From Chara braunii (lineage: Eukaryota > Plantae > Charophyceae), in the NCBI GenBank assembly GCA_003427395.1, contig BFEA01000023.1, positions 707,722-757,212 of the forward strand: a stretch of 49,491 nucleotides of DNA, in the 5' to 3' direction. Position numbers and translations under genes: made by a program. Within the stretch, counting starts at the first letter, position 1, and each line of letters begins with the position of its first letter. Shown here piece by piece: positions 1,412 through 40,294 of the stretch. The notes under the pieces were generated by a model, which was not told where the DNA came from, did not search any database, and saw only the letters and a list, made by a program, of their open reading frames with translations.

Positions 1412-1526
1412 GTCCTTCAGAACGTATGTTAAAATTGCAACAATACAAAGAAGATTAGGATGACCCTTGCGCAAGGATGACATGCATAAATTAAGAAATT
1501 GTCAAAATTAAATTAAAAAAAAAAAA
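1412..1526 (+). pseudogene. U6: Degenerate full-length U6 snRNA copy with A tail
   Basis: gtccttcagaac..ttaaaattgcaacaatacaaagaagattaggatgacccttgcgcaaggatgacatgcataaattaagaaattgtcaaaatt aligns to plant U6; followed by aaatt plus an A run. Confidence 0.9.
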
Positions 1527-13100: not shown

Positions 13101-16100
13101 AACACATCCAGATTCAGGCTCTTAATCCTATCCCTTTGCGGGGAGTGATAACGTGGGCCTTTGCTTAATCCTCCCAGGATGCCGGGGGTGAAAATATGGG
13201 CCTTTGCTTAACCCATAAATCGGGGACACCCCTCTGCGGATTTCTGACAGTCTGTCAATCATGAATGACTTTAAGTAATCGGGCTCAGGCAGGCCTCGGG
13301 GAATTTGAAGCTATGGCAGCGCTCAGTTTCCAAGGGCGGGGTCCACGCTCAACCAGCGCGTGGTCCAAGTCGGAGCACTGGGAGGTTCCCTCTTGGAATC
13401 AACCATTGTTCCATCTTGGAATCAGAACCCGAGCACACACACACACACACCTGTCTCTTATACACATCTAGATGTGTATAAGAGACAGGATAAATGTTCG
13501 TTAAATCGTTAGTTTAATGAAAGCACTTTGAACTTTGATTTCCAAACGTCGGATAACTATTGTGCAGTGTAAACCCGATCCACAGAAATGTCTGCAAACT
13601 TGCTTCAAGTTCTCACATGGGGAGTAAGGAAGGGGAGCGGGGTGGGAAGGGAGGGAGCGAGGGTCAGATTATGCCAACCAATTAACATTTTTTTTTCGGT
13701 GGCTACCGCTAACGAGGAGTCGTCGGAGGAGGTGCTGCAACAATACTGTGGATGAACCCTGGTTGACAAAAGGTGGTGTGGCAGCATATGGTTTTTACAT
13801 CTGACTGGGCCAAGAAAGGAAAAAACTGATATGTTCTACAAAATTGCAATCCAAACATCTTTTGCCTTAAAGTCGTATCCAAATTCATAGCCAACACTGA
13901 GTTAAAAAAACATATTTAAATTCATAACAAAAACCGAGGTAAAAAGTGTAACAACAAAATTAACCTTACTTCAACTATCACCTCTTATTTCATAGCATCA
14001 ATAAACTATCTCGTATATTTTCAGATATTTGTCTTTAGTAGTACCCTCTGTGAGACATTTTGCCTCGCTAAACTTCGATAGTTATGGATCGCTGATTTTA
14101 TTTTTTGTTGCTTCCCTACATATTGATTCTCTCCCCCTTCCCTTTATTTCCTCGTATTTGATAAACTATCTCATATATTCCCTTGCTAAACTTCAATAGT
14201 TATGAATCACTAATTTTGTTTTTTACCACTCCCCTACATGTTGATGCTCTTCCTCTCCCCTTTATTTCCCAGTATTAATGGACTATCTTATATATTGCCC
14301 TGCTAAACTTCAATAGTTATGAATCACCGATTTTGTTTTTTACTGCTCCCCTACACGTTGATGTTTTTCCCCTCCTCTTTATTTCCTAGTATTTATAAAC
14401 TATCTCATATATTGTCCTGCTAAACATCAATAGTTATGACTCGCTTATTTTTTATTTTACTTCTCTCCTACATGTTGATGCTCTTCCCCTTCCCTTTATT
14501 TCCTAGTATTAATAAAATATCTCATACGTATTTATACATTTGTCGTCAGTACCCTTTGTGAGATATTTTGCCCTGCTAAACTTTAATAGTTATGGATCAC
14601 TGATTTTGTTTTTCACTGCTCCCCTACATGTTAACGCTCGTCGCTCGATTGATAGGAGTTGCACCATCTACTTGTAACTCTCTTTCTAGCCTGGCCAACT
14701 CTACTCAGAGCACTAAGTTGGAATGTGTAAAAGATAGAGGGATTTTCCTTTTGATGTGCGTCGTGTACTTCACGTCCTTTGCTTCATGACAGCGTGACGT
14801 GGAAAATCCGACCACTTGCCCCTTAGATTTTTATTTTTATTTTTTGCCTTTTTTTATTGATTCTAGGGGTAACTTTGGCGCAGTCACGAAAACAGTTTGT
14901 AATTGCATTTGAAACTGCGTTTTAGCAGTTTAGTCAGGGTCCGGGTTTCAGTTGCAGTTGAAACTCGGGCTGCCTTTCCGTAGCAGTTCAGTCGGGGTCC
15001 TCGTCTATCCACGAACAGCAGATAAAAAAAAAAAAAAACATCCGTTATGTTGTGATTGCGGTCCGATACAGGATGCTTCAGTACTTGTCTGAAACTCAAT
15101 GAGCGTGGAATCCGCCTTGCCTAGCTGGCAGGGCACTATAGGGACCTCACAACAAAAAACAAAAAAGGAAAACGACATGTTCACTTCCTGGCCAGATACA
15201 TTCGTCAGGTGGATTCAAAGTTCCTCATTTCTTTACTTTTTTATTAACCGAAGTTTTAAGCGCAACCAGTATCTAAGGCAAGCAGTCATCACAAATAGAT
15301 GAGATGAATATGATCATCCACTAGGCAAGCATTGCTTGATTTTGTTTCTATAGGTCCAACAATTTGAAGCCTCCTTTCCTTATTGGATAACAAATGTTTT
15401 CTCGCATGACTTTTGAGATGAAGCCACATTCTACCTCACAAAACGGTTTCCAAATAAACTTTGCATCAACCCTTGTTACCGCCTTCGGTAGTTCTTATGA
15501 AAGCAGCCTCAACCGCCGAACAGAGATAAGTGGGGGAGCGGACCCACCTGAAGATACTTTTAATTACCTCTTATTGAAATATATTTCTTTGAAAGTCCCC
15601 TGCAGTTCTTACGCACCATTTGTATTCCTATGTACCCTTTGGAATGATTTTGTGTCACTCTCTTCATTCTAAGCTTTTAGACTTCCATCATGGCATAACA
15701 CGGCGCAGACCGTAAGTGAAGATTCTGTATTGGTTATGATTGCGAATAGGTCATGGCATAACATTGCGCAAGTCGTAAGTGAAGATTGTGTATTGGTTAT
15801 GATTACGAATAAGTCATCGGCCAATGCTTTCACCTTTCATATTTTGTTTTGAACTTGCATACATTTAATATTGAGACATGATCTAATATTGCAAACTAGA
15901 GCCTTGAACCATTAGTACCTTTGCCATGTGGGAAAATAGCAGGCCTCGGGTGGGTCTCCAACCTTTCGAAGGTTGAAACGAAACGACGGTCGCCGATCAG
16001 ATTTATCAATGGCAGTCATCGTCTGGCCCGACCTCCGAATTTTTAGGAGTTTGTGAGTTTTCTTTATTTTTAATATTTTTTCAATGCTGGCGGAGGTACT

Positions 16101-17962
16101 AGTGGTTTAAGTTGCAACACGAAAAACAAAGGAGTAAGGGGGAAACCCTATCTCAACGATCTCCTGACTACTCTTTTACGAAACTTTGGGTCACAGGATA
16201 AGTAAAGAGTTACCACGCTGATTTTTTCTGAATCGTTAGTAAGAGGGGGTCTGGGGGGACTGCAGGAAGCAAGGGTGAGGGCATGTCCATCAGGCAGCAG
16301 GCAGAGGGATGAATCTTTTAAGACAGTGGCAGGAGGAACCCTAGTACAAGAGCTCAGAATAGATCCCAATCAGTGGGGTTGGAAAGTAGGAAGTGAAGTG
16401 GTAATAGACCTCTGCAACCTGAGCCCAGCGCTAGTCATCAGAAGAAGAGCGGGTAGGAGAAAGTTGATGGACAAGTTGATCCCTCGCTGGGAAAAGGCGC
16501 AACCTTGCATACTTGCACCTACGGGAATGCAGCTTACGCGCCTGTGGAAGCAGTTAGCGGACATACCGTCACAAAAGGTAGCATCCCTGCTATGGTTACA
16601 GTCTCACTTGTCAGTCCCAACGGCGAACTGGCTAAGGAAAAGAGGAATGCAAGTAAAAATGGACTGTGACAGATGTGCGTGGCCCATTGAGACAATGCCT
16701 CACATGTGGTGGGACTGCGCCCGCTCGAGGAAGTGGTGGTTATGGTGGTTCATACACTGGGAGAAGATGTCAGGGAGTAAAGGGGAACAGGACGTGGCGT
16801 GGGTCCTACAAGGCTTTCTGAGCCAAGGGGGGAGGGGAGACAAGGGTAGGGGGTATATTGCCCAGGTCAGTCGGGCGGCGATGATGTGGGTCATCTGGCT
16901 GGACAGAAACGGCAGAAGATTTCAAAATCAAGGACTGTCGGAAATGCAGGCAGAGAAACTGTTCAAATCGATGCTGAAAACGAAAATCAGAGTGGATTGG
17001 AGAAAGAGAGTGGTTCAGGGGAGCAAACCGGCAGGTCTGAGGTGGTTCTATGAGACCTGGGCAGCACCAGGAGCTCTGGCAGAGGTAAGAGAAGGGAAGA
17101 TGAAAACGGCTCCTTGGCTTGATAGATAAACCAAGTGGGGAGGAGAGGTAACACAGGGGTCCCAGTAGTAAGGAGGTGGTGGGGTAATGGTAGGTAGGTA
17201 AGGGAGAAGGGGAGATTTAAGTAGGATCACTGGAGTCAGACAAATTGGCTTCGGTTCGTAGGTGACGGGGATAACAGTTAGGCGGGTAATAGTAGGAGTA
17301 GCAGCCTGGGCACTCGGCTGCGATAAAACGGTTCGGTCGCAGTAGACACAGTGGATCTGGGAGTGCTAGTTAACGAGGAACTTGGTTCCATCGACCGAGA
17401 TAGGTGGAGGATTGGCCGGGTTAGGCCAATCGTAGTTAGACCAGGGGTTAGGGTTTATGGTGCAATAGGGGGTTAGTGAGATTAGGTAGGCAGGGAAGAA
17501 ATAGGTTAGGACTGAGGGATTAAGAAGGAATTCATGATAAGTACAAGTTTTATGCACGTGTTCAAGAAGTTGGTACATGATTGGATGAGGATAAGCTAAA
17601 TCGGCTGATGCTGCCGGGATAACTCCGGGTGGAATTGTGAGGTCCCCGGCCTCAGCTCATTGATTGATAAGAATAAATAATTTGTTGTTAAAAAAGAAAA
17701 AAAAAAGAAAAAAGAATTGGGCCTCGCTCCAATACCGTCAACTTTCACAAAAAACGAAAATCATGGCGGTGTATCCTTCCATGTTGTAGAGGAAGATTCA
17801 TCGGCCAATTGGCCATAGCGGCGGATGTCGTTGTCCGTTCGTTAATTGCAGCCTTCCACCTCTCGGCACCTCCGCTACCTGTTTCCCGAACAGAGATGGG
17901 GCCTCTCTCCCACACTCTCCAAAGGTGCAAAACGAGACAGCTAGAAAATGAAAACATACGTC

Positions 17963-18010
<48 letters not shown>

Positions 18011-21000
18011 NCTCTCCTCCTCTTCCTCTTAACAATGTTGTTTTTACTTCTCTCCCTCTTCACCTCTTCAAGGTCTATTTCTTTTCTTCTTCTTCTTCTT
18101 CTTCTTCTTCTTCTTCTTCTTCTTGTTCTTGTTCTTGTTCTTCCTCCTTTGAACAACGTCTGTTCTTATAACTCCCTTGACGTCTGTTCTTATAACTCCC
18201 TTCTGTCAAGTAAGTCCTTCCACTCCTATGTATTTAATGCCGGGCATTGCTAAGCTATGTATTTAATGCCGGGCATTGCTAAGATGCCAGGATTATTGTT
18301 ATCCTCCTCTACATCGCGTACGGACTGGGCTGCAGTCTTTGTTTCCTTCTGTCTCCTCTGTTCGGATTCCTTGCTCTTTGTTTCCTCTTTTTTTCTACCC
18401 GGTGTTTTGTTTGCCTTTGTTCTTTACTGTTTGTCTCTGGAACCTCACTGTCTGTCTCTGGAGGCTCACTGTTTGTCTATGTTTGCCAGTTGTTGGGGTT
18501 AACTTTGTCTCTGGAGCCTCACTGCTTGTTGATTGCTCACGTTGTCTCTTGTTGAATTTGCGTGTGGTCCCCCCACCAGAGCTCCCAGGCTATGGCCGCT
18601 GCTCTCCCAGAGGTGTCGGTGGAGCCGTTCGTCGTAGACATTCCCGTGCCATTTAAGGCTCACAGGATAGAGCCTCCATCGCAGCAGATCGAGACTAGTG
18701 CAGGTGAGCACTTTGACAAGTCTTCCATCCTGTTCCAATGTTCCTCCCAAACCGTGGATTCAGTCTGTCACTGAGTCTTTTTTTTTAATGCTACCGTTTA
18801 CCGTCCTTGCACCTCTCTCTCTCTCTCTCTCTCTCGTTCTTGCATGTGGTCTGTCCGTTGACATGGCTGGTGATTGGTTGGTGGAGTTTCCTAAACAAGG
18901 AAGGGAAAATCTGCTGGATGAATTCCCTAGACGTGTCCTGGGAGATAACCGCTAAAATTGGAATGATGCAAAGAAAAAAAGCATGGCCTAAATTTGGCAA
19001 ATAAAAAAAGAAAAGAAAACTCTTTGAAGGGAGAAGCCCCCTACAAGTATTCTGGGGGACATCCGTTAAAATTCAAAGGGTGCAAGGTAAAAACATGTGT
19101 TGTGGAAAAGCGAGGATGACATGCATAATTCAAGAGAGGATCCAAATTTGGCCAAAAAAAAAAAAAGAACTGTTTGAAGTGAGCAGCCTATGTACTTGAA
19201 CGGGACACATGTGAATGTTGGTAAGCCGACCATGAGTTTGTGCTTCGCCGCCAGGCGGCGGCCCTTCGGCCTTACATGAAAAATGTGCTTAGGCGGTGAG
19301 TATACTAATGTCAGGGGCAACCCTCCTTCACCCTTCCCCCCCTTCCCCTTCCCCGCCTCACTCCTGGCCCCCTGAAAAGAAAAGAGAGGCAAAACAGCTT
19401 TTTCTCCCTTGGAAGTAAGAATTGTATCCCCTCGAATTGGCAGTGAAACCTAAGGAAAACGCTTAATTATTTTTTTATTTTTTTTTAAGGAAGATTATTA
19501 TAGTACCTGGTGTTTGCCCTAGAGTGAAAGAAAAAGGGAGGAACTTGGGTAAGGAGTTGTATCTCCCCTTGGTGCATTGTTATGGTACCCCTCAAGTTGG
19601 AACAATATGCTAAAAGATTAGCATCGCTTTGCACAAGGACGAGACCCACCTACAAATGCACGAAGGCATGTCCAGATTGTGAAGAAAGCAGGGGAAGAGG
19701 TAAGAGAAATGGTAATGTTTTTTTTTCCGCTTTTTCCCTCCTTTTGTCTTTTATAGCTACCCTTTTATACGATAATGTTTCTAAGGACCAAGTACAGACA
19801 AAAGTGACCACAATTGACATAACTGCAGTCAAGATTTGTGAACAGAAAATCGTAAGAAGCCTTAAACATGTCTCTGACGAAATCCATGTCGTGAATCCGA
19901 TATAACATCAAGCACCGGCTTCCAGTACAACCTGAAGAAATTGTGGCAGTTTTTAACAATACCCATATGAAAACACAGACTCTGGGCCTCGCTCCACTAC
20001 TCTCGACATGCACAACAGACAAAAATCATGGCGGTGTATCTTTCCATGTTCTAGCGGCAGATTCACTCTCGTCTTGCACATTTCGAGAGTAGTGGAGCGA
20101 GGCCCTTTACGAAATTGTGCCAGTTCCGACAAAACCCAACCCATATGAAAACACAGACTTTAAAAAAATTGTGGCAGTTCTGACAAAAGTCTCAAAAACA
20201 CAGACTTTAAGAAACTGTGGCAGTTCTGACAAAAGTCTCAAAACCCATATGAAAACACGGACCTGAAGGAATTGTGGCATTTCTGACAGAGTCCACGGTG
20301 CGCATTTGATATAAGAACAAGCACTGGCTCCCTGTGCATCATCATAAAAAGAGTCGAATCACTGACCTGAAGAAATCAAAGCAATGAACCACCATAATGT
20401 TTCTTATTATGACCCCTAAACAATCATAATGTTTTTTTGGACCCCTGTCTGATTACGATCCAGCAGCGTGCAAGGATGTCACCTGCGAATCGAGGAACGG
20501 ACATAACACAGACCAGTTGTGCCATAATGCTTCTAGGGACCGCTGTCTGAATTTTATCGTGCAGCGTGCAAGAACGGTGGTACCCATAAATTTGAGGGAT
20601 TTAGCTATGTTCGGATTGTGAACGACACCAGTAATCGAGGAATGAAATTGTTTCCAGATCTTGTCAATTGAACAAGGGAAAGTGATGATACCCACAAATT
20701 GAGGAGTGAAATCGTGTCTAGAATTATGTCTGGGATGTTTCGAAAATGGAATCATATCTATGTAGTCTCCAAAACGAAAGAAAGCAGCGAGTTTGATATC
20801 GGAATGATATTATTCATAAAAAAAAATAAGGGAAAGGGATGACACCCACAAGAAAGGAAAGGGACGACACGCACAAATTACAGGGAGGGAGGGATACAAG
20901 TACGCGAAAACGGTTGGTTGAAATGGAAGCGTCCGAACCATCAGATGTTACAATGGATGCCTGCTCTCTGTTCAGCAGTGTGCGAGGCCTGGAGCCCTGA

Positions 21001-31559: not shown

Positions 31560-32931
31560 CCTGGAGAAGCGATGGAAATAGTCAATAAACGGTTGTCATA
31601 TAAATAACGGTGGGATTGTCCGTAAACAGTGTGAAGTAATATATTATTGATTTGTGTATATGATGATGTAAGGTCTGCATAGCCGTTTGGCTGTAATTCA
31701 TTTTGCCAGGATAACCTGGATAAGTAATTAATAAGAATACATTTTAAATTCCTCTGGGACATCTGTTAAAATTGGAACAATACAGAGAAGATTAGCATGA
31801 CCCGTGCGCAACAATGACGCACGTAAATCGAGAAATGGTCCAAATTATTAAAGAAAGAAACAATTCAATACATGTGTTTTCCGGAATGTGGTATGGAGTA
31901 CCAGGGAGGAAGAAAGTGTGGTTATTGGTATTAAGTTGTCAACTCATGAATTTATAATTAAATTAATTGATGAAAATTTGATTTTACACCCCCCCCTCCC
32001 CGGGACCCCCTGACAGGTTCATTTGGGCTGTGGGGGTTTTGACTGCCTCTTGCTGGGTCTTCTGATTTGATTTCTCTCTGATATCCAGATTATGTGTGTC
32101 TATGGTTGCTGGTGATAAGCAACCGGACTGTTGCTCTCCAGGACAGATGGGGCTTGTGCCTGGTTAAAAAAAAAAAAAAAAAAAAGGAAAATGAGAAAAA
32201 AAAGGATTTTGCTTCAGCGTGGATGCTTGGCACTTCTCCACCTCGCTAAGCAATATTGTTAGTACTTAGTTGCAAACATGTGGTTTGTGCTAGCCGTGTT
32301 TCCTGAAAAGTTCAAATTGACAGTAACATTAACTCAATTGACATTAACATAATAAGGATAAGGAGATTCTTTCTATTTAAAAAGAGTCCCCAAATATGTA
32401 AAAGAAAAAGAATCATTGAAAATGTTATATATTTCACTAAATCCATATTCCGATATTTGTATTAATGATTTATCCCCATTTTCTACATTGGTGGCTATTA
32501 TTATTATTTGCCAACTGCTAGTACTTGCTATGGATCAGTCGAGTAACTGACTTAGATTGTTCGTCATCTACTATTGGAATTGCGATTGAAACGTTGGCGA
32601 GCAGACTCCTATCGGTGCAGGAATTGCTTTTGCATTGAAGTACAACAAAGTACCGGTAAGTAGTTTTTTGTTTTTTGTTTTTGTCGAATATTTCACCCCC
32701 TTCGATTCCACCTGTTGCATGCAGCCATGCAAATATACGCTGACACACGTGTACTTAGCGCAAGAAGCAGTGGATTGTTCATAAAGTGTACTTAGTGCAA
32801 GGAGCAGTCAATTTTTTTTATTTTTTTTATTTTTTTTATCCCTCTGCCTGATTCTTAGCTTTCGTAGTCAATTGGGTGTATCTTTTTGGAACTGGCTGTC
32901 TCCTGACCAAAGAATTGAACATTGGTTTTTG

Positions 32932-32975
<44 letters not shown>

Positions 32976-35435
32976 AAGGAACTGAACATTGGGCGCACTT
33001 CTGCTGTGTTTGGATATTCCTGTTTGATTTTGCAGGCTGTTTGTATTGCCATGTATGGTGATGGCGCAGCTAATCAAGGACAGGTACGGTAGGGCGAAGT
33101 AGAACTGCCTGTTATGTGATGTTTTCATAAGAGTCGAGACATTTGCTCTCTCTTTTATCACGTTGCAATACCACGGCAACTTCGCCGGCAAGAGTGCATG
33201 TTTTTTTTGGTCTTTTTTTTTTGTTGTTGTTGAACATTGGATGTGCAACAGATGTGGGTAATGCTTGGGGATTTTGTTTTTTCCCCCCTTGTTTCGTTGT
33301 TATTGAAGGTGTTAGCCTTCTGATCTTTTGCAGTGCTGGTGCCCACGATTACTGTCCGGTCAGGTCACTCTACAAAGAACTGGTACAAGGGTATTATACT
33401 ACTATGATCCTCGTTAAGAGCTAGGGTAAGGGGTATTGTGGTCCTTGATGAGGTAGGATAATGGGTATTGTGGTCCTCAGCGAGGTAGCATACGGGTATT
33501 ATGGCCGTCCTCATTGAGGTAGTGTAAGGGGTATTATGGTCACACCCCGATGGTCGTTGTCTTGTCGGCTCACTCCCAAGTATTGGTACAAGGGATTGGT
33601 AGAAGGGTATTATACTATTATGGTCCTCCATGAGGTGGACTAGAGGGAGTGGGTGCGTGCCCGGGAACATCGAGAGGTGGAAGGATGGGGACTGTCGAGA
33701 AGTGGAAGGATGGGGACTCATGATAGATTGTGTCCCAAGACAGCAAGTCCCCACATCCACACACACATCCACACACGCATCCACCTGCGCGTCCACCTGG
33801 GCATCCAGCCCGCCATTGTGCAAGTTTTTTGTGTTCGATTCATAGCATGTGCAAGTTTTCACGGTTTTGCACTGTCAGCAGTGAACGCTTTCTTTGTCTT
33901 CATTTGTGGGGTTGGACGTGTTGCAAGTCGCACGATGCTTGCGTGCTAGACCATTAGAAAAAAACTAGCTATTACCGATTCGACTTTCTGAGATACGAGG
34001 AGCAGTGTTGTTCTGCACCACACCGACCTTTTTCATCTCCTGCCATTGAGAGGAGGATCGGTGTGTTTTTTTAAAGTGTGCTGTACAACTCTGAAGTCTG
34101 TACACATTGAGAAGAAGAAGATTCATACGAAAGGTGAAACAGAGGCTGAAAATCGCTGGTAGATCATTAATGCCTGTATACAGTGTATATAGTATATACC
34201 ATAATAAAATGTCTGTTTCCATGCGCATTTTCGTAACGCTACCTGTGCGTGCTATGGCGAGACAATCATGGCCGCAAGTCTAATTCCAGCCCAGGTAACA
34301 TGACTGTGTCAGGTTGGCAGACCTGACGAGCAGCAGTCGTTAGCGGAATTCAAACTATGTTTGGATGTCGTCTGTTTTCTCCGTTTTCTAAGTAATGGAT
34401 CCAGCCTGGTCTTGGAAAGGAGTTGGAGGTGTAATGTTGCTTTCAAACACCAAACAGAGGTGACCCACTGGACTCAATGTCACTCGATGCAAGAGTGAAA
34501 GGTGAAACCCACATCTTGCTCCTGTGTGATGTGTCTGGGAAAAAAAGGGAAAAATCACAGGTATAGGAGGAGGAGGAGGAGGAGGAGGTGGTGGCGGCAT
34601 TAAAAGCTAATATGGCAAAGAAGTAGAAGTAGAAGGGAAAAAACGAGACAAAGAAGAAGAGGATGGATAGACAAGGAAACGTTTTCAATGTGGAAATCCA
34701 GGAGTCTAGGTATTTCTGCACTTGGGTGTGTAACACAAGGAAAAGTCGTACAAGGAAAAAAACGAGACAAAGAAGAAGAGGATGGACAAAGAATCGTTTT
34801 CATGTGGAAATCCCAGGAGTCGAGGTTTTGACAAAATTGATTCCATCTACGTTTAATACAAAGTGTGAAAAGTCAAAACTCCATGCACGTGTGAAAAGTC
34901 AAACAAGCATGAGTATCGTCAGATCTGTTGCAGAGTAGGTCGAGTGTATGTAAGCAATCCATACGTTGTTGAGAGTGCAGTGTCGGTGTCTGCTGTCCTT
35001 GCATTGTGATGGTCTGTCGGACCTTTTTCTAACTTGATGGCTTGTAAATGTGTTGGCTCTCTGTGCAGCTATTTGAGGCGATGAACATGTCCGCTTTGTG
35101 GAGTCTGCCAATTATCTACGTGTGTGAGAATAACCAGTACGTCGTCGTCCACCGAATTTTCCTTTCTTTTTTAAGCTTTTTTTTTTTTTTTCCCCCTCTT
35201 CCTCCCCCTGCCGCCCTTTTTTTTGTTCCTTTATTCAAACGGTCTTGAGATATTATTGTGAGACTGACAAGCTCCAGGTAATTCAAGAATTTCAGTCATC
35301 TTGGTCCATTTGAATTCGATCTCAGGTCTGTATTTCAAAGGTCTGTTCGTGTACCAATTGAGCTAGGCGCCTCAGTCGTGCTCCCGATTTTCTGCGAATT
35401 TGTGATGTTTCTTTTTTCCTCCATTCCAACTTTGT

Positions 35436-35486
<51 letters not shown>

Positions 35487-35487
35487 N

Positions 35488-35570
<83 letters not shown>

Positions 35571-37694
35571 GTGTGTGTGTGTTCTTTTTGGTGTTTTCTG
35601 GTGGGGGGTTCTGCTCTTCATGTCGGTTGCTCAGCTGGGTTAGTATCTCGTACTGTCTTCACCCGAATAGAATGCCTGGTAATTATTGCTGTATCTGGGC
35701 TAAAAGTTTGTGCCAAATACAGCTATAATGACGGGCGTTCTATTCGGGTGAAGACGGGGCTGATTGAGTAGCAGTTAACTCCTGTGTTGTGCCGAGGCTG
35801 TAGAAATGTCTGTTGGGGTTCGTTGTTGTTGTTATTGTTCTTCTTCTTCTTCTTCTGGCTTGTTGACTGTCTCATTTATCATCTGCTAGAATGCAGAAAG
35901 ATACACCTGTCAATAGGCCGTCATAGCTTTTGTCGTTTTCACATTTGGTGAGTGTGGAGGCAAGAATGCTGCAAGCACCACTGTACTCGTCGTTTTGTTT
36001 TTCCTTGTCATTTGTTTACTTCAGGGAGCTGTGCATGTCTACTTCGCACAATCGACAGGGAGCTGTGCATGCCTACTTGGCAGAAAAGAAGGGAAATGTA
36101 AAATAAGTCAAAGAACTTTAAATAAGCAGGCAGTGGATCTACCTCCTTTCTCTAACTGTGGTGGCTAAAAGTCTTCCATTTTGCTTTGCGGTGTGAACAC
36201 AAAAAAAATGCTGTCTGTGGTTTTGAAGGGCAGTAAGTTGGTTGCAATTTCTGCACCGCATCAGCAGTCTAGTGAAATGTGGGAACAATGCGCAATGCTT
36301 GGTGGATAGCCCAGAACCTCTTGGCCCATCCTGCGGACCGATCTCTGCACCAGCTTTGTGGCGTGATAAGAATGGAGATGAATGTCTCGTTCGGGACTGC
36401 TGTAGTCTTTACCCGAATAGCACGCTCAGGCACTATAGCTGTATTCGGGGCAACTTTAAGTTGGGATGGAAGTACAATGACCGGCCGTTCTATTTGGGCG
36501 AAGATGGTACACGTGCGGAAGGGCCCACCCAAATCTCTTCATCCCACCTGGGAACCAATTTCCGCACAATTGCAAACATTGATGTCTGTTTTTGGAATAC
36601 TCCTTTGCGTCTTGCATGGGGCTTCGTTTAGCACATCCCATGAAATTCTCGGCACCTTTACAGATTTGGTTAGCAGTGTCCCTTGCCTGGGAGAGCGTCT
36701 CATATTCCTCAATTCAATTGTAGTGGCTATGGTCGTCACCCGAATAGAACGCTTGGCCGTTATAGCTGTATTTGGTGCAAATTTCAGTCCGGGTACGGCT
36801 TTAATTACCAGGCGTGCTATTCGTGCAAATATGGTAGCCTCGTTGATAGCCCCTTATGACTGTACCAAGCTGTCTATTCGTGTGAAGACGGTAGCCTCTT
36901 CGATAGCCTCATATGACTGTACCAGGCATTCTATTCGGGTGAAGACGGTAGCCTCGTTGATAGCCTTATGACTGTACCAGGACTGGAACAAGGTTTGTAT
37001 ACATTCATGATGCCGAGGTGCTGTGTTGGGGAGGGGGAGAAGAAAGACCTCCGCTGCTGATCTCGTCTGGAAGCGTTGTCAAGAGAACACAACTATGCCC
37101 ATTGATGATGGTTTGGCGGGTCCGTGCAGTCATGGGCTGTGCTGTTAAAGCACCAGTACATGGGCACCTGGGCCGCCGGTCTGCTGGAGAGGTGAGAAAC
37201 GAAAACGGGGCCGCTGATCAAATTTAATCAATGGCGGCCCCCGGGTTTGACGTTTTGGACGTTTTGGCCGCGTTTTTCTTGTGGCAAGAAGTTTCGAACT
37301 GCAACGGTGGGGCGGTGCAGTTTTGTGGTTTATGAATGTATCTGACGACTACGGTTTTGAAAGTTTGATGATGACCCTTTCTGCAAGCTTCAGCAGTGAG
37401 ATTTGAGAACGTTGTTTTTCTGTGGTTGTGGCTTTCAGAGCTGTCTTCGACGTGGGGAAGGTTGTGATTTCGAAAGTTTGAATTGGCTTCATGATCCTTG
37501 CAAAATGGATGTAAAGAAGCTGTAAAGATGTTTTTTTTCTTTTTTTTCTCACCTTCCCATGCGAATCTTGTCTGTATTGTTCCAATTTTAACAGATGTCC
37601 TGATGGACAATTGGAAAGAAATTCTTTTTTTTATTTTTTATAATTTAATTTGGACCATTTCTCGATTTATGTGTGTCATCCTTGCGCAGGGGCC

Positions 37695-37726
<32 letters not shown>

Positions 37727-40294
37727 ACGGATGTCCTGAAGGACAATTGTAAAGAAATTCTACTTTACCTTTTTTGGAATATAAGTAAGTGTACAATACA
37801 TGATTTATGGGCGTCATCCTTGCGCAGGGGCCATGCTATTCATGTTAGCGTTCACAATTGGACGGCAAACGAATGAAAAATTTGAACTGCATGGATGATA
37901 TTCACATGGGATAAATCTTCCCTCGTTTTTCGTGTTTTGGCGCTATGGCTCACAGTTATGGGATGGGCACTGCAGAGTGGAGGGCAGCGAAATCGCCAGA
38001 CTTTTACAGCCGTGGCGATTACATTCCCGGACTGAAGGTAGACGGGATGGATGTCCTGGCTGTTAAACAAGCTATACGATTTGCAAAGAAACACAGCCTT
38101 GAAGGAAAGGGACCTTTCGTTCTGGAAATGGACACCTACCGGTACCATGGGCATTCCATGTCTGATCCGGGCAGCACTTACCGAACAAGGGAGGAGATCT
38201 CGGGAATTCGCCAGGAACGCGACCCGATTGAAAGAGTTAAGAAATTGCTGATCGGCCGTCAGATTGTACAGCCGGCAGATCTGAAGGTAGGCACTTCCTT
38301 CTTCTTTTTTCCTGAAGTCACTGAAGTGCGTAATTGTTTGGGGGTTGCAAATGCATTGTATTGTATCATATTGTCAAACAGAGCTTCCCGGTGAACCGTC
38401 CGTAGGCAGAGAGGGAGAAGAGGACAACAAACAGATAATGGAAGCAATATGCACAGTTGCTTCATCACATCCTCTCGACATGCATTCTGTAGCATGTGCA
38501 TCAAAGCTGCACTTGACACGGTTATTTCAGGACCCCTTTCATTCCTCTCGGCTGCGGAATGCATGCCGCAGAACTGTGTCGACTGCAGCTTTGACGCAGT
38601 GGAATGCATCACATCCACTGCGTCAAAGCTGCAGATGACACAGTTCTTTCAGGGTAAGGTCTGTGGAATGCATCAAAGCTGCGTGAAAGTGTATTTCATT
38701 CCACTGCGTCAAAGCCGCAGTTGACACAGTTATTTCAGGGCAAGCCTGCAGAGGAATGAAAGGGGTCTTTAAGCACAGAGGAATGAAAGGTGCCATTAAG
38801 CACAGAGGAATGAAAGGGGTCCTTAAGCACAGAGGAATGAATGGGTCCATTCTTATCTCCTCGTTAGACCTTTGTGGAACAGGGCAGGCATATGAGCTGG
38901 GTCCATGGCAAGTCAAGCAGATGAAGAATTTGTGGAAGAGGGAGACATTTTTTCCATGTTTGTTAGTAGTGAGAGACATTTTTTCCATGTTTATTAGTAG
39001 TGTTGTGCTGCCTATCTGGAAGTGAATGGTTGTTTGCTCATTTTCTGGGTTTGGATGTCTGATTCTGTTCGAGTATTGAGTTTATCTGTGCCTAGCACTT
39101 GTGAGTGCTATGAAGCAGTGCTATTGTGGTGCCAGTAGTAGGGTATTGTTTAGTTCTATAATAAAAAGAATAACGATAAGTGATTGTACTGAATGTAAAA
39201 AGAAGAATCAATATAATCATAAATAATGAAATTCATATACTCTATTACTCGTACATTTTAGAGATTATGTAATAATTGATGTAATAGAGAATGAAAGAAT
39301 ATACATATAATGATATAAACACAAAATAAATCTACATTGTTGTCTATTTTAGATTTTCTGTTTATATTACTTTATATGTATATATATATTCAGCCTCCTG
39401 ATGAGTCGGTGAAACTCCGACGAAACAGTTTGTCAAAGCCGCTCGTTTGTTGTCCTCTTCTCTCTCTCTGCCTACGGTTTACTGGGCAGTTCTGTTTGTG
39501 ACGATATATATATGTATATATATTCTTCCTCGAGTTCGGTCATTATCACTGAATCTAAGCTGAAAGTTACACCAAGTACTGCTATAACGACCGGGGGTAA
39601 AGACGGTGGTTGCGGCACTACCGAACAACGATATCACCGTTGGCAGTGTGATATGAGGTAGAGGAGGATAAGTGACTGTTCATAAGACATTGGGTTTGAC
39701 CACAAGCAATTGCTTGCTCCAAAAGAATATAGATAAAAAGTTGATTATGGTCAAACCATTGAGCATACTCAGCATAGCATAGTTACTCGATGGTTTGACT
39801 ACAATCAACTTCCTAATCGTCTGTGCGGGTTGTGGGTATTGAGAACATCTGTGCATGTTGAGGCCTAACTTTTCTTCTGAGACTCAATAATACTATCTAT
39901 TTTTATTGCAAATTATATGATCTGTGATTTTAGCTCAGGTCTTTTTAGTGCTCAAGGAAAAAACAATTTGAGAAAGTAATCCAATGAGCATAGTGCAATG
40001 ATAGTTGCGCACAAATTATGAAGGTTGATTCAACTTGATTTGCTGATTTCCACCAAGAGTTTCATATCCTGGCAGTATATGCCAATGCTGTGCGGATCGC
40101 CAAAGTCCGTATAGTAGCATATACCCTTAGTGGAAGTTACTATACCCTAAGTGGAAGTCGTGGTGATGCGTTTTGTGATGGCGTGACCACAGTAAGTTGT
40201 GGTACGGTCATCTTTAAAGGTGGTCCCAGGATTGTGGAATTGGTACTACGTTAGGCGGTACCAGTTTTGGAGTCTGCATTGAGCAGAGGTTGGC

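What the first reader, a model, noticed from the sequence alone, without database searches (positions are those of the whole stretch)
37557..37838. Circularly permuted tandem U6 array (3' half - spacer - full U6 - A-tail/spacer - 5' half)
Seen: on the minus strand three U6 pieces repeat with a 136-138 bp period. Each U6 start is preceded by the same 17-nt linker AGAATTTCTTT(A/C)CAATT. The array begins at TAGCATGG and ends at CGCATGG, the same internal U6 position, so it amounts to about two units of a circle opened inside U6. The central copy is almost identical to plant U6 but ends CCAAATTAAATT plus A-rich sequence instead of oligo-T, and has no upstream USE/TATA. Inference: ordinary U6 retro-pseudogenes are monomers, so a permuted multimer suggests rolling-circle reverse transcription of a circular [U6+linker] RNA, or a mobile U6 mini-satellite. 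A plain alternative is a local tandem duplication, or a TSD-flanked insertion in front of an older copy.
Basis: partly seen in the sequence, partly recalled or inferred. Interest (0 to 1): 0.8.

Follow-up and report, generated by a model that had tools for sequence, protein, structure and literature searches.

The report
Local tandem repeat of U6 pseudogenes
Three head-to-tail, dead copies of the splicing RNA U6 sit backwards inside an intron of a pyruvate dehydrogenase gene; they look like an RNA-derived U6 copy and its flanking DNA that were duplicated on the spot, which happens all over this stretch of genome, and nothing points to copying from a circular RNA.

Summary
On the minus strand, U6 pieces repeat every 138 and 136 bases. 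A 17-base linker (16/17 identical) precedes two U6 starts. The central copy is a near-perfect, A-tailed U6 (Rfam 99 bits).

The circle and minisatellite readings are not supported:
- The linker occurs nowhere else in the window.
- Two other good U6 copies are monomers with unrelated flanks.
- A second U6 array 18 kb away has the same build (U6, A-tail, linker) but an unrelated linker, and its units share mutations, which points to DNA-level duplication.
- About 8.7% of the window lies in roughly two-copy tandem duplications, so a duplicated U6 copy is not surprising.
- "Starts and ends at the same U6 position" is what any two-unit duplication looks like.
- The last unit carries its own A-tail.

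Best reading: a LINE-type U6 processed pseudogene plus target-derived flank, duplicated locally at DNA level and then decayed.

Unexplained: 40 bases of the first unit are far more diverged than the rest, and the central copy is fresher than its neighbour.

Earlier notes of this scan report other U6 arrays on other pieces of this genome, which they name Chara braunii (not tested here). I could not search the rest of the genome.

The parts
37802..37838 (-). Unit A core: U6 positions 47-83, 35/37 identical to the central copy
   Evidence: BLAST 94.6% over 37 nt. nhmmer extends it to 37853-37797, U6 27-86, E=2.7e-10. cmscan aligns the whole model across 37885-37782 at 40.9 bits.
37762..37801 (-). 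40-nt spacer where U6 84-101 plus the A-tail of unit A should be; only 23/40 identical to the matching part of unit B
   Evidence: Global alignment p=0.008 against dinucleotide shuffles but 0.087 against AT-matched genomic 40-mers. Fisher p=3e-6 against the rest of the repeat. No other match in the window.
37745..37761 (-). Linker copy L1, AGAATTTCTTTACAATT; candidate 5' target-site duplication of unit B
   Evidence: Exact pattern search. No 13-16/17 match elsewhere on either strand.
37644..37744 (-). Unit B: full-length U6 retrocopy, no oligo-T terminator
   Evidence: Rfam RF00026, 99.1 bits, model positions 1-105.
37626..37643 (-). A-rich tail of unit B (ATTATAAAAAATAAAAAAA)
   Evidence: Sequence read. 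The same CCAAATT-AAATT-A(n) ending is seen in the independent copy at 1412-1526.
37609..37625 (-). Linker copy L2, AGAATTTCTTTCCAATT (16/17 to L1)
   Evidence: flank repeat score 16, p=0.001.
37557..37608 (-). Unit C: U6 positions 1-52, 47/52 identical to B; all five differences are derived in C, and two are CpG decay
   Evidence: nhmmer E=2.2e-11.
37531..37556 (-). Rest of unit C: GAAGGTGAGA (possibly U6 62-72) followed by its own A8GA8 tail
   Evidence: cmscan alignment. No significant global similarity to the 3' half of B (p=0.93).
37504..37534 (-). Possible degraded third linker copy directly after the tail of C: 12/17 in register, plus the exact 9-mer TTCTTTACA 12 nt further on
   Evidence: 1.2% of random 38-mers and 1 of 75 other A-run flanks score as high, so this is suggestive only.
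37956..38391 (+). Exon of the host gene (pyruvate dehydrogenase E1 alpha type). The array lies antisense in the intron upstream of it, about 70 nt from the 3' splice site.
   Evidence: Pfam E1_dh, E=1e-41, profile positions 162-270. The previous exon, about 35066-35140, matches profile positions 139-163.
18936..19188 (+). Second, older U6 array of the same build but with an unrelated linker (ACTSTTTGAAGKGAGMAGCC)
   Evidence: nhmmer hits 18936-18989 (U6 2-55) and 19051-19148 (U6 3-98). Junction repeat 18990-19038 against 19144-19188 scores 28.5, shuffles 8.9 +/- 1.6.
1412..1526 (+). Monomeric A-tailed U6 retrocopy with unrelated flanks (comparison copy)
   Evidence: Rfam 74.7 bits; flanks read.
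31750..31848 (+). Monomeric U6 retrocopy (comparison copy)
   Evidence: Rfam 78.7 bits; flanks read.

Best explanation
This is a locally made, DNA-level tandem repeat built from a LINE-type processed U6 pseudogene. Step 1 (inferred from standard hallmarks): a polyadenylated U6 RNA was reverse-transcribed into an intron of the pyruvate dehydrogenase E1-alpha gene, antisense to the gene. That produced U6 plus an A-rich tail, bracketed by a 17-nt sequence from the target DNA. Step 2 (inferred): replication slippage or unequal exchange duplicated the ~137-bp unit of linker, U6 and tail. The exchange was either between the flanking 17-mers or between neighbouring U6 pieces at the shared TTAGCATGG stretch. 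In the second case both outer edges fall at one U6 position and a whole U6 is left in the middle. Step 3: the outer units decayed by point changes, CpG loss and a deletion in unit C. The array is not a gene: it has no terminator, the outer copies are broken, and nothing suggests function. The linker is local DNA, not part of a mobile or circular RNA.
For: - Unit B has the hallmarks of a processed pseudogene: full U6 at 99 bits, no T-run, an A-rich tail, and a 16/17 flanking repeat (p=0.001). These are the features described for mammalian U6/poly(A) pseudogenes (PMC4476161).
- A LINE remnant lies in the window (zf-RVT), along with 48 A-runs of 9 or more bases.
- The linker is private to this locus. 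The five metagenome matches to linker+GTCC are not followed by U6.
- A second array in the same window has the same build with an unrelated linker. Its two units share derived changes: TTTGGC before the tail, TGCAA in place of TACAG, and a TGGG loop. That fits copying at DNA level from an already mutated unit, although a shared variant source RNA is not excluded.
- Local tandem duplication is pervasive here: 21 non-microsatellite arrays, mostly about 2.0 copies, cover 8.7% of the window.
- A two-unit duplication necessarily starts and ends in the same phase of the unit.
- Divergence between units (about 7.5% outside the spacer) argues against an assembly artefact.
Against: - Period-shifted identity is not uniform: 98/106 in three blocks but 23/40 in the spacer (p=3e-6). 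No one-step duplication predicts that.
- Unit B has 0/52 derived changes against 5/52 in unit C (p=0.03). This hints that B is younger or was refreshed.
- A two-unit duplication with breakpoints inside U6 needs an earlier state that already held two adjacent U6 pieces.
- Two of four clear U6 loci being arrays is slightly more than the 8% background predicts (p=0.035).
- The third linker copy after unit C is only suggestive.
- No empty site and no second genome was available to show that the linker is target DNA.
Confidence: 0.6

Rival explanations
1. Two or three separate U6 retro-insertions hit the same spot, at the edge of an existing A-tail. Each reused the same nicks and so the same 17-nt target-site duplication: the oldest is upstream (A), then C, then the young full-length B between them.
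For: - The units appear to differ in age: B is pristine, C is 10% diverged with CpG decay, and A is mostly decayed.
- B and C have different 3' structures and different tails.
- B is bracketed exactly by the 17-mer.
- C may be bracketed by L2 and a more diverged L3.
- The period arises naturally as U6 (101) + tail (about 20) + duplication (17).
- 3'-truncated, A-tailed U6 copies with target-site duplications are known in mammals (PMC4476161).
Against: - It needs both nicks to be reused exactly, at least twice.
- The bottom-strand site (TTCT followed by T-run or ACTT) is a poor match to the L1-type TTTT/A preference quoted in PMC4476161.
- The 35/37 core inside an otherwise roughly 57% identical unit A stays unexplained (p=3.5e-5).
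- The second array's units share derived changes, which favours DNA copying there.
- The two monomeric copies in the window show no comparable target-site duplication.
Confidence: 0.2
2. One RNA-level event made the multimer. Either reverse transcriptase ran about twice round a circular [U6 + tail + linker] RNA, or a multimeric transcript of an array elsewhere was retro-copied here.
For: - The clear homology begins and ends at the same U6 position and spans about 2.06 units.
- A poly(A) run follows the last piece after 10 unrelated bases. This would fit a template switch from a polyadenylated RNA, the order seen in U6/LINE chimeras (PMC4476161 abstract).
- Other U6 arrays are reported elsewhere in this genome by earlier notes, one with about 135 nt per unit (untested).
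Against: - The linker is absent from the rest of the window and from the flanks of the other U6 copies.
- The other array uses a different linker, so there is no common U6+linker RNA.
- Units made in one pass should be equally alike, and they are not.
- No significant repeat flanks the whole array.
- No ribozyme or other circularising element is present: the Rfam scan at E<=1 finds only U6 here.
- Equal phase at both ends is also what plain duplication gives.
Confidence: 0.06
3. Repeated priming within one integration event. After copying a U6 RNA and the 17-nt target stretch, the new DNA end primed again on another polyadenylated U6 RNA. One event would then lay down several [linker-U6-tail] units from different RNA molecules.
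For: - The linker sits at each junction.
- The units have different tails and truncations, as expected from separate RNA templates.
- Arrays look somewhat over-represented among U6 loci (p=0.035; earlier notes).
Against: - I know of no precedent for this, and I found none in the papers I searched.
- It predicts linkers and units of equal age, but L3 (12/17) is far more diverged than L1 against L2 (16/17), and C carries CpG decay that B lacks.
- The shared mutations in the second array fit DNA copying better.
Confidence: 0.05
4. Assembly artefact: a single U6 copy was wrongly expanded during assembly.
For: The window contains several scaffold gaps.
Against: - The nearest N is at 35487, about 2 kb away.
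- The units differ by 5-10%, by a deletion and by different tails, unlike collapsed or duplicated reads.
Confidence: 0.02

Closest known systems
U6/poly(A) and 3'-truncated U6 processed pseudogenes made by LINE-1 in mammals (Doucet et al. 2015, PMC4476161)
   Same: The copy is promoter-less, has an A-rich tail in place of the oligo-U end, and carries flanking direct repeats the size of a target-site duplication. Unit C resembles their class of 3'-truncated, A-tailed copies.
   Different: Those copies are described as dispersed monomers or U6-LINE chimeras, and the word 'tandem' does not occur in that paper. Here the copy and its flank are repeated head to tail. The genome is from the plant lineage, and U6 copies are far denser (4 clear loci in 49 kb).
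Tandem amplification of a unit bracketed by short direct repeats through unequal sister-chromatid exchange (Chen et al. 2022, PMC8831618)
   Same: The layout is short repeat, unit, short repeat, unit, with the short repeat at each junction (abstract). Here the short repeat would be the 17-mer.
   Different: That work concerns genes and elements amplified to many copies, often under selection. Here there are two to three dead copies, and the role of the 17-mer in the exchange is inferred, not shown.
circRNA-derived pseudogenes (Dong et al. 2016, Cell Research; from my own knowledge, only cited in passing in PMC7894079)
   Same: A retrocopy whose order of parts is circularly permuted, sometimes with more than one unit.
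   Different: Those junctions are back-splice junctions of exons with no foreign linker. Here the junction carries a private 17-mer and an A-tail, the units differ in age, and no circularising signal is present.
Alu and L1 insertions next to or inside the A-tails of older elements (from my own knowledge, not tested here)
   Same: They produce head-to-tail neighbours in one orientation, separated by A-rich sequence.
   Different: Their target-site duplications are usually A-rich tail sequence, and each insertion has its own. Here the same non-A-rich 17-mer recurs.

Membership tests
LINE-mobilised processed U6 pseudogene | U6 sequence without its own promoter or terminator | tested here: met
   Unit B aligns to Rfam U6 positions 1-105 at 99.1 bits, but AAA replaces the terminal U-run. 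What lies upstream is another U6 piece and the linker. USE/TATA elements were not formally scanned.
LINE-mobilised processed U6 pseudogene | A-rich tail at the 3' end | tested here: met
   ATTATAAAAAATAAAAAAA follows unit B and A8GA8 follows unit C. The independent copy at 1412-1526 has the same kind of tail.
LINE-mobilised processed U6 pseudogene | Target-site duplication bracketing the U6 and its tail | tested here: inconclusive
   A 16/17 direct repeat brackets unit B exactly. The same repeat is equally expected from tandem duplication, and no empty site was available.
LINE-mobilised processed U6 pseudogene | A LINE reverse transcriptase that uses poly(A) is present in the genome | tested here: inconclusive
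   A zf-RVT domain ORF lies at 16275-17129 and there are 48 long A-runs. No intact LINE was examined.
DNA-level local tandem duplication | Head-to-tail units of constant period that include non-U6 flank | tested here: met
   Periods are 138 and 136, with the linker inside the unit.
DNA-level local tandem duplication | Units share private derived changes | tested here: inconclusive
   Met in the second array. In this array no shared derived change was found in the U6 body. Only the tail pattern of A and B is loosely alike.
DNA-level local tandem duplication | Uniform divergence between the copies of one event | tested here: not met
   98/106 against 23/40 (p=3e-6). More than one event, or a later local change, is needed.
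Rolling-circle retrocopy of a circular RNA | The same permuted junction (tail-linker-U6 start) recurs at other loci or in RNA | tested here: not met
   It is absent from the rest of the window. Metagenome matches to the linker lack U6. The whole genome and RNA data are not testable with these tools.
Rolling-circle retrocopy of a circular RNA | A circularising element or a detected circular RNA | not testable with these tools
   No ribozyme family was found in 37300-38100 at E<=10. RNA data are not available.
U6-derived SINE or mobile minisatellite | Many copies share the same non-U6 parts (linker or LINE-like tail) | tested here: not met
   The flanks of the other U6 copies are unrelated, and the second array has a different linker. 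Only the short AAATT-A(n) ending is shared.
Functional U6 gene | Oligo-T terminator directly after the U6 3' end | tested here: not met
   CCAAATT is followed by AAATTATAAAA.

The most novel reading that the evidence does not exclude
Head-to-tail U6 arrays are a recurrent product of retroposition itself in this genome. New U6 cDNAs would be laid down beside existing U6 copies or re-primed at the same nick, giving [target repeat-U6-tail] multimers. On this reading the arrays are not by-products of generic DNA duplication.
Probability: 0.1. Interest if true: 0.6.

Novelty: new member of a known kind. Interest (0 to 1): 0.25.

Why it matters
If the ordinary reading is right, the locus is one more dead snRNA retrocopy caught in this genome's very active local duplication, and its value is mainly as a marker. 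It does show how a duplication with breakpoints inside a repeat can mimic a "circular permutation", and how it can leave an intact-looking U6 between two broken ones. The wider question is why U6 is copied back into this genome so densely, and why arrays of it recur. That question is worth a genome-wide survey; this locus alone does not answer it.

Tried and rejected
- **Linker in public metagenomes.** Five exact hits, none followed by U6, so they are chance matches.
- **Linker as a shared 3' tail of all U6 copies.** The sequences after the A-tails of the other copies loosely resemble it (GAA..TCTTT), but many unrelated A-runs in the window are also followed by GAA. The copy at 31748 matches only 12/17. 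I rejected this as composition or endonuclease preference plus chance.
- **A direct repeat flanking the whole array.** 37912-37877 against 37510-37473, offset 404: local score p=0.055, and 17/24 lies inside the shuffle null. Dropped.
- **The 40-nt spacer as an inversion or a copy from elsewhere in the window.** No match.
- **The 5' extension of unit A and the 3' part of unit C as decayed U6.** Weak or absent (p=0.03-0.075 and 0.93).
- **Literature search for tandem U6 pseudogenes.** Nothing specific.
- **Steps not taken.** I did not verify the species. None of the fetched contigs looked human.
Full report
**What is there.** Read on the minus strand, the region runs as follows.
- A U6 piece begins at TAGCATGG (37838) and matches U6 positions 47-83.
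- 40 further bases follow.
- The 17-mer AGAATTTCTTTACAATT lies at 37761-37745.
- A complete U6 lies at 37744-37644. It ends CCAAATT-AAATT and continues into an A-rich run.
- The 17-mer occurs again with one change at 37625-37609.
- U6 positions 1-52 lie at 37608-37557 and end CGCATGG.
- Then come GAAGGTGAGA and an A8GA8 run.

The GCATGG anchors are 138 and 136 bases apart. TRF reports period 136, 2.2 copies and 80% matches. Rfam U6 scores 99.1 bits for the central copy and 40.9 and 39.9 bits for the outer pieces. Offsets 138 and 136 give 24/24 and 23/24 matches, where shuffles never exceed 19/24.

**How sharp the ends are.** Beyond that, in-register global alignments are weak.
- The 5' side of the first piece gives p=0.03-0.075.
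- The 40-nt spacer against the U6 3' end plus tail gives p=0.008 against shuffles, but 0.087 against AT-matched genomic 40-mers.
- What follows the last GCATGG shows no similarity (p=0.93; all).

Directly after the A-run of the last unit lies a 12/17 in-register match to the linker, with the exact 9-mer TTCTTTACA 12 nt further on. Only 1.2% of random 38-mers and 1 of 75 other A-run flanks score as high. A third, decayed linker copy is therefore possible but not shown.

**Surroundings.**
- The array is not inside any longer repeat of the window.
- It lies antisense in an intron of a gene on the plus strand. That gene's exons match the Pfam E1 dehydrogenase profile in order: positions 103-129, 123-140, 139-163, then 162-270 at 37956-38391. 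I searched the exons one by one by reference and did not join them.
- The first U6 piece ends about 70 nt upstream of that exon's splice acceptor.
- The window also holds a LINE remnant (zf-RVT) and 48 A-runs of nine or more bases.

**Other U6 copies in the window.**
- Two are good monomers, at 1412-1511 and 31750-31848. Their flanks are unrelated to the linker and to each other. The linker itself has no 13-16/17 match anywhere else on either strand.
- A second array was not part of the finding. On the plus strand, U6 2-55 (18936-18989) and U6 3-98 (19051-19148) are each followed by the same unusual ending (CCAAATTTGGC), an A-run and a roughly 20-nt linker, ACTSTTTGAAGKGAGMAGCC. The junction repeat scores 28.5 against 8.9 +/- 1.6 for shuffles.
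- That linker is unrelated to the one in the finding.
- The two units of the second array share changes absent from the other U6 copies: TTTGGC before the tail, TGCAA in place of TACAG, and a TGGG loop. This is what copying at DNA level from an already altered unit gives. A common variant source RNA is the alternative.

**Background rate of duplication.** TRF and a self-comparison find 21 tandem arrays with periods of 20-250 bases. Most have close to two copies, and together they cover 8.7% of the non-N bases. With about 8% background, at least one of four U6 loci falling in such an array has probability 0.29, and two or more has probability 0.035. Duplication of a U6 copy is therefore no surprise, and arrays may be mildly enriched.

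**Reading.** Unit B has every mark of a LINE-type processed U6 pseudogene: a full U6, no terminator, an A-rich tail, and a 16/17 direct repeat bracketing exactly U6 plus tail. The same marks are described for mammalian U6/poly(A) pseudogenes, which also include 3'-truncated A-tailed copies like unit C (PMC4476161).

Several results together indicate that the linker is local DNA and that the multimer was made on the spot:
- the linker is private to this locus;
- the other array has its own, different linker;
- the last unit carries its own A-run.

"Begins and ends at the same U6 position" is a property of any two-unit duplication. If the exchange took place between two neighbouring U6 pieces at their shared TTAGCATGG stretch, both outer edges fall at that point and a whole U6 is rebuilt between them. 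Amplification of a unit bracketed by short direct repeats through unequal sister-chromatid exchange is a described route (PMC8831618).

**What does not fit.**
- Period-shifted identity is 35/37, 16/17 and 47/52 in three blocks but only 23/40 in the spacer (Fisher p=3e-6). No single event, whether slippage, unequal exchange or rolling circle, predicts this.
- All five differences between B and C in U6 1-52 are derived in C, judged against the Rfam consensus and the other copies. Two of them are CpG decay. The probability under equal ages is 0.03.
- Within unit A, the core is much better kept than its sides (p=3.5e-5).

These points favour a history of several steps and keep alive the rival in which B is a younger insertion that reused the same site. 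I cannot separate the two from one locus.

**The circle.** A circular U6+linker RNA should leave the same junction elsewhere. It does not within 49 kb, and metagenome matches to the linker lack U6. Units from one pass should be equally alike, and they are not. No repeat flanks the whole array. No ribozyme or similar element is present. I put this reading, together with a retro-copied multimeric transcript, at about 6%.

**Earlier notes of this scan.** name the genome as Chara braunii. They report dense U6 retrocopies, other head-to-tail U6 arrays on other pieces (one of seven units in 948 letters, about 135 per unit), and a 17-18-bp target-site duplication at another A-tailed retrocopy. I treated these as leads only and did not test them, apart from confirming the high U6 density in this window.

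**Verdict.** Two details remain unexplained, and a genome-wide question could not be addressed here.

Noticed in passing
window 18936-19188 (+): A second, older U6 array. Two units, U6 2-55 with an internal deletion and U6 3-98, each end CCAAATTTGGC plus an A-run plus a roughly 20-nt private linker. A similar linker-like stretch lies upstream of the first unit.
   Followed up: partly
window 32590-38391 (+): Host gene of pyruvate dehydrogenase E1-alpha type, with collinear exons. The U6 array is antisense in its intron, about 70 nt from the splice acceptor near 37955, so the pre-mRNA carries more than two stretches complementary to U6 snRNA. The U6 copy at 31750-31848 lies upstream of the first visible exon in the sense orientation.
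   Followed up: partly
whole window: Local tandem duplication is pervasive: 21 arrays with periods of 20-250 bases, mostly about two copies, cover 8.7% of the bases. Examples are 14060-14642 (period 117), 44383-44862 (period 252) and 48526-48827 (period 149).
   Followed up: partly
window 1505-1526 and 37626-37650: Two independent U6 retrocopies share the ending CCAAATT-AAATT-A(n) where a U6 gene has CCAAATTTTT. This could be a common source transcript or a few bases copied from the 3' end of the partner LINE.
   Followed up: no
window 19567-19730 (+): A weak U6 match (22.9 bits) with an insertion. It is followed at about 19705-19722 by GAGAAATGGTAATG and a run of nine T, which is the only U6-like 3' end with a terminator-like T-run in the window.
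   Followed up: no
window 16275-17129 (+): ORF with a zf-RVT domain (E=9.5e-8), a remnant of a non-LTR retrotransposon. The window also holds 48 A-runs of nine or more bases, many of them followed by GAA.
   Followed up: no
My whole-window Rfam scan at E<=1 lists no hammerhead family.
   Followed up: partly
window 31734-31750 (+): The 17 bases just upstream of the U6 copy at 31750 match the linker at 12/17 in register. There are 39 such matches in the window, so I judged this to be chance.
   Followed up: partly
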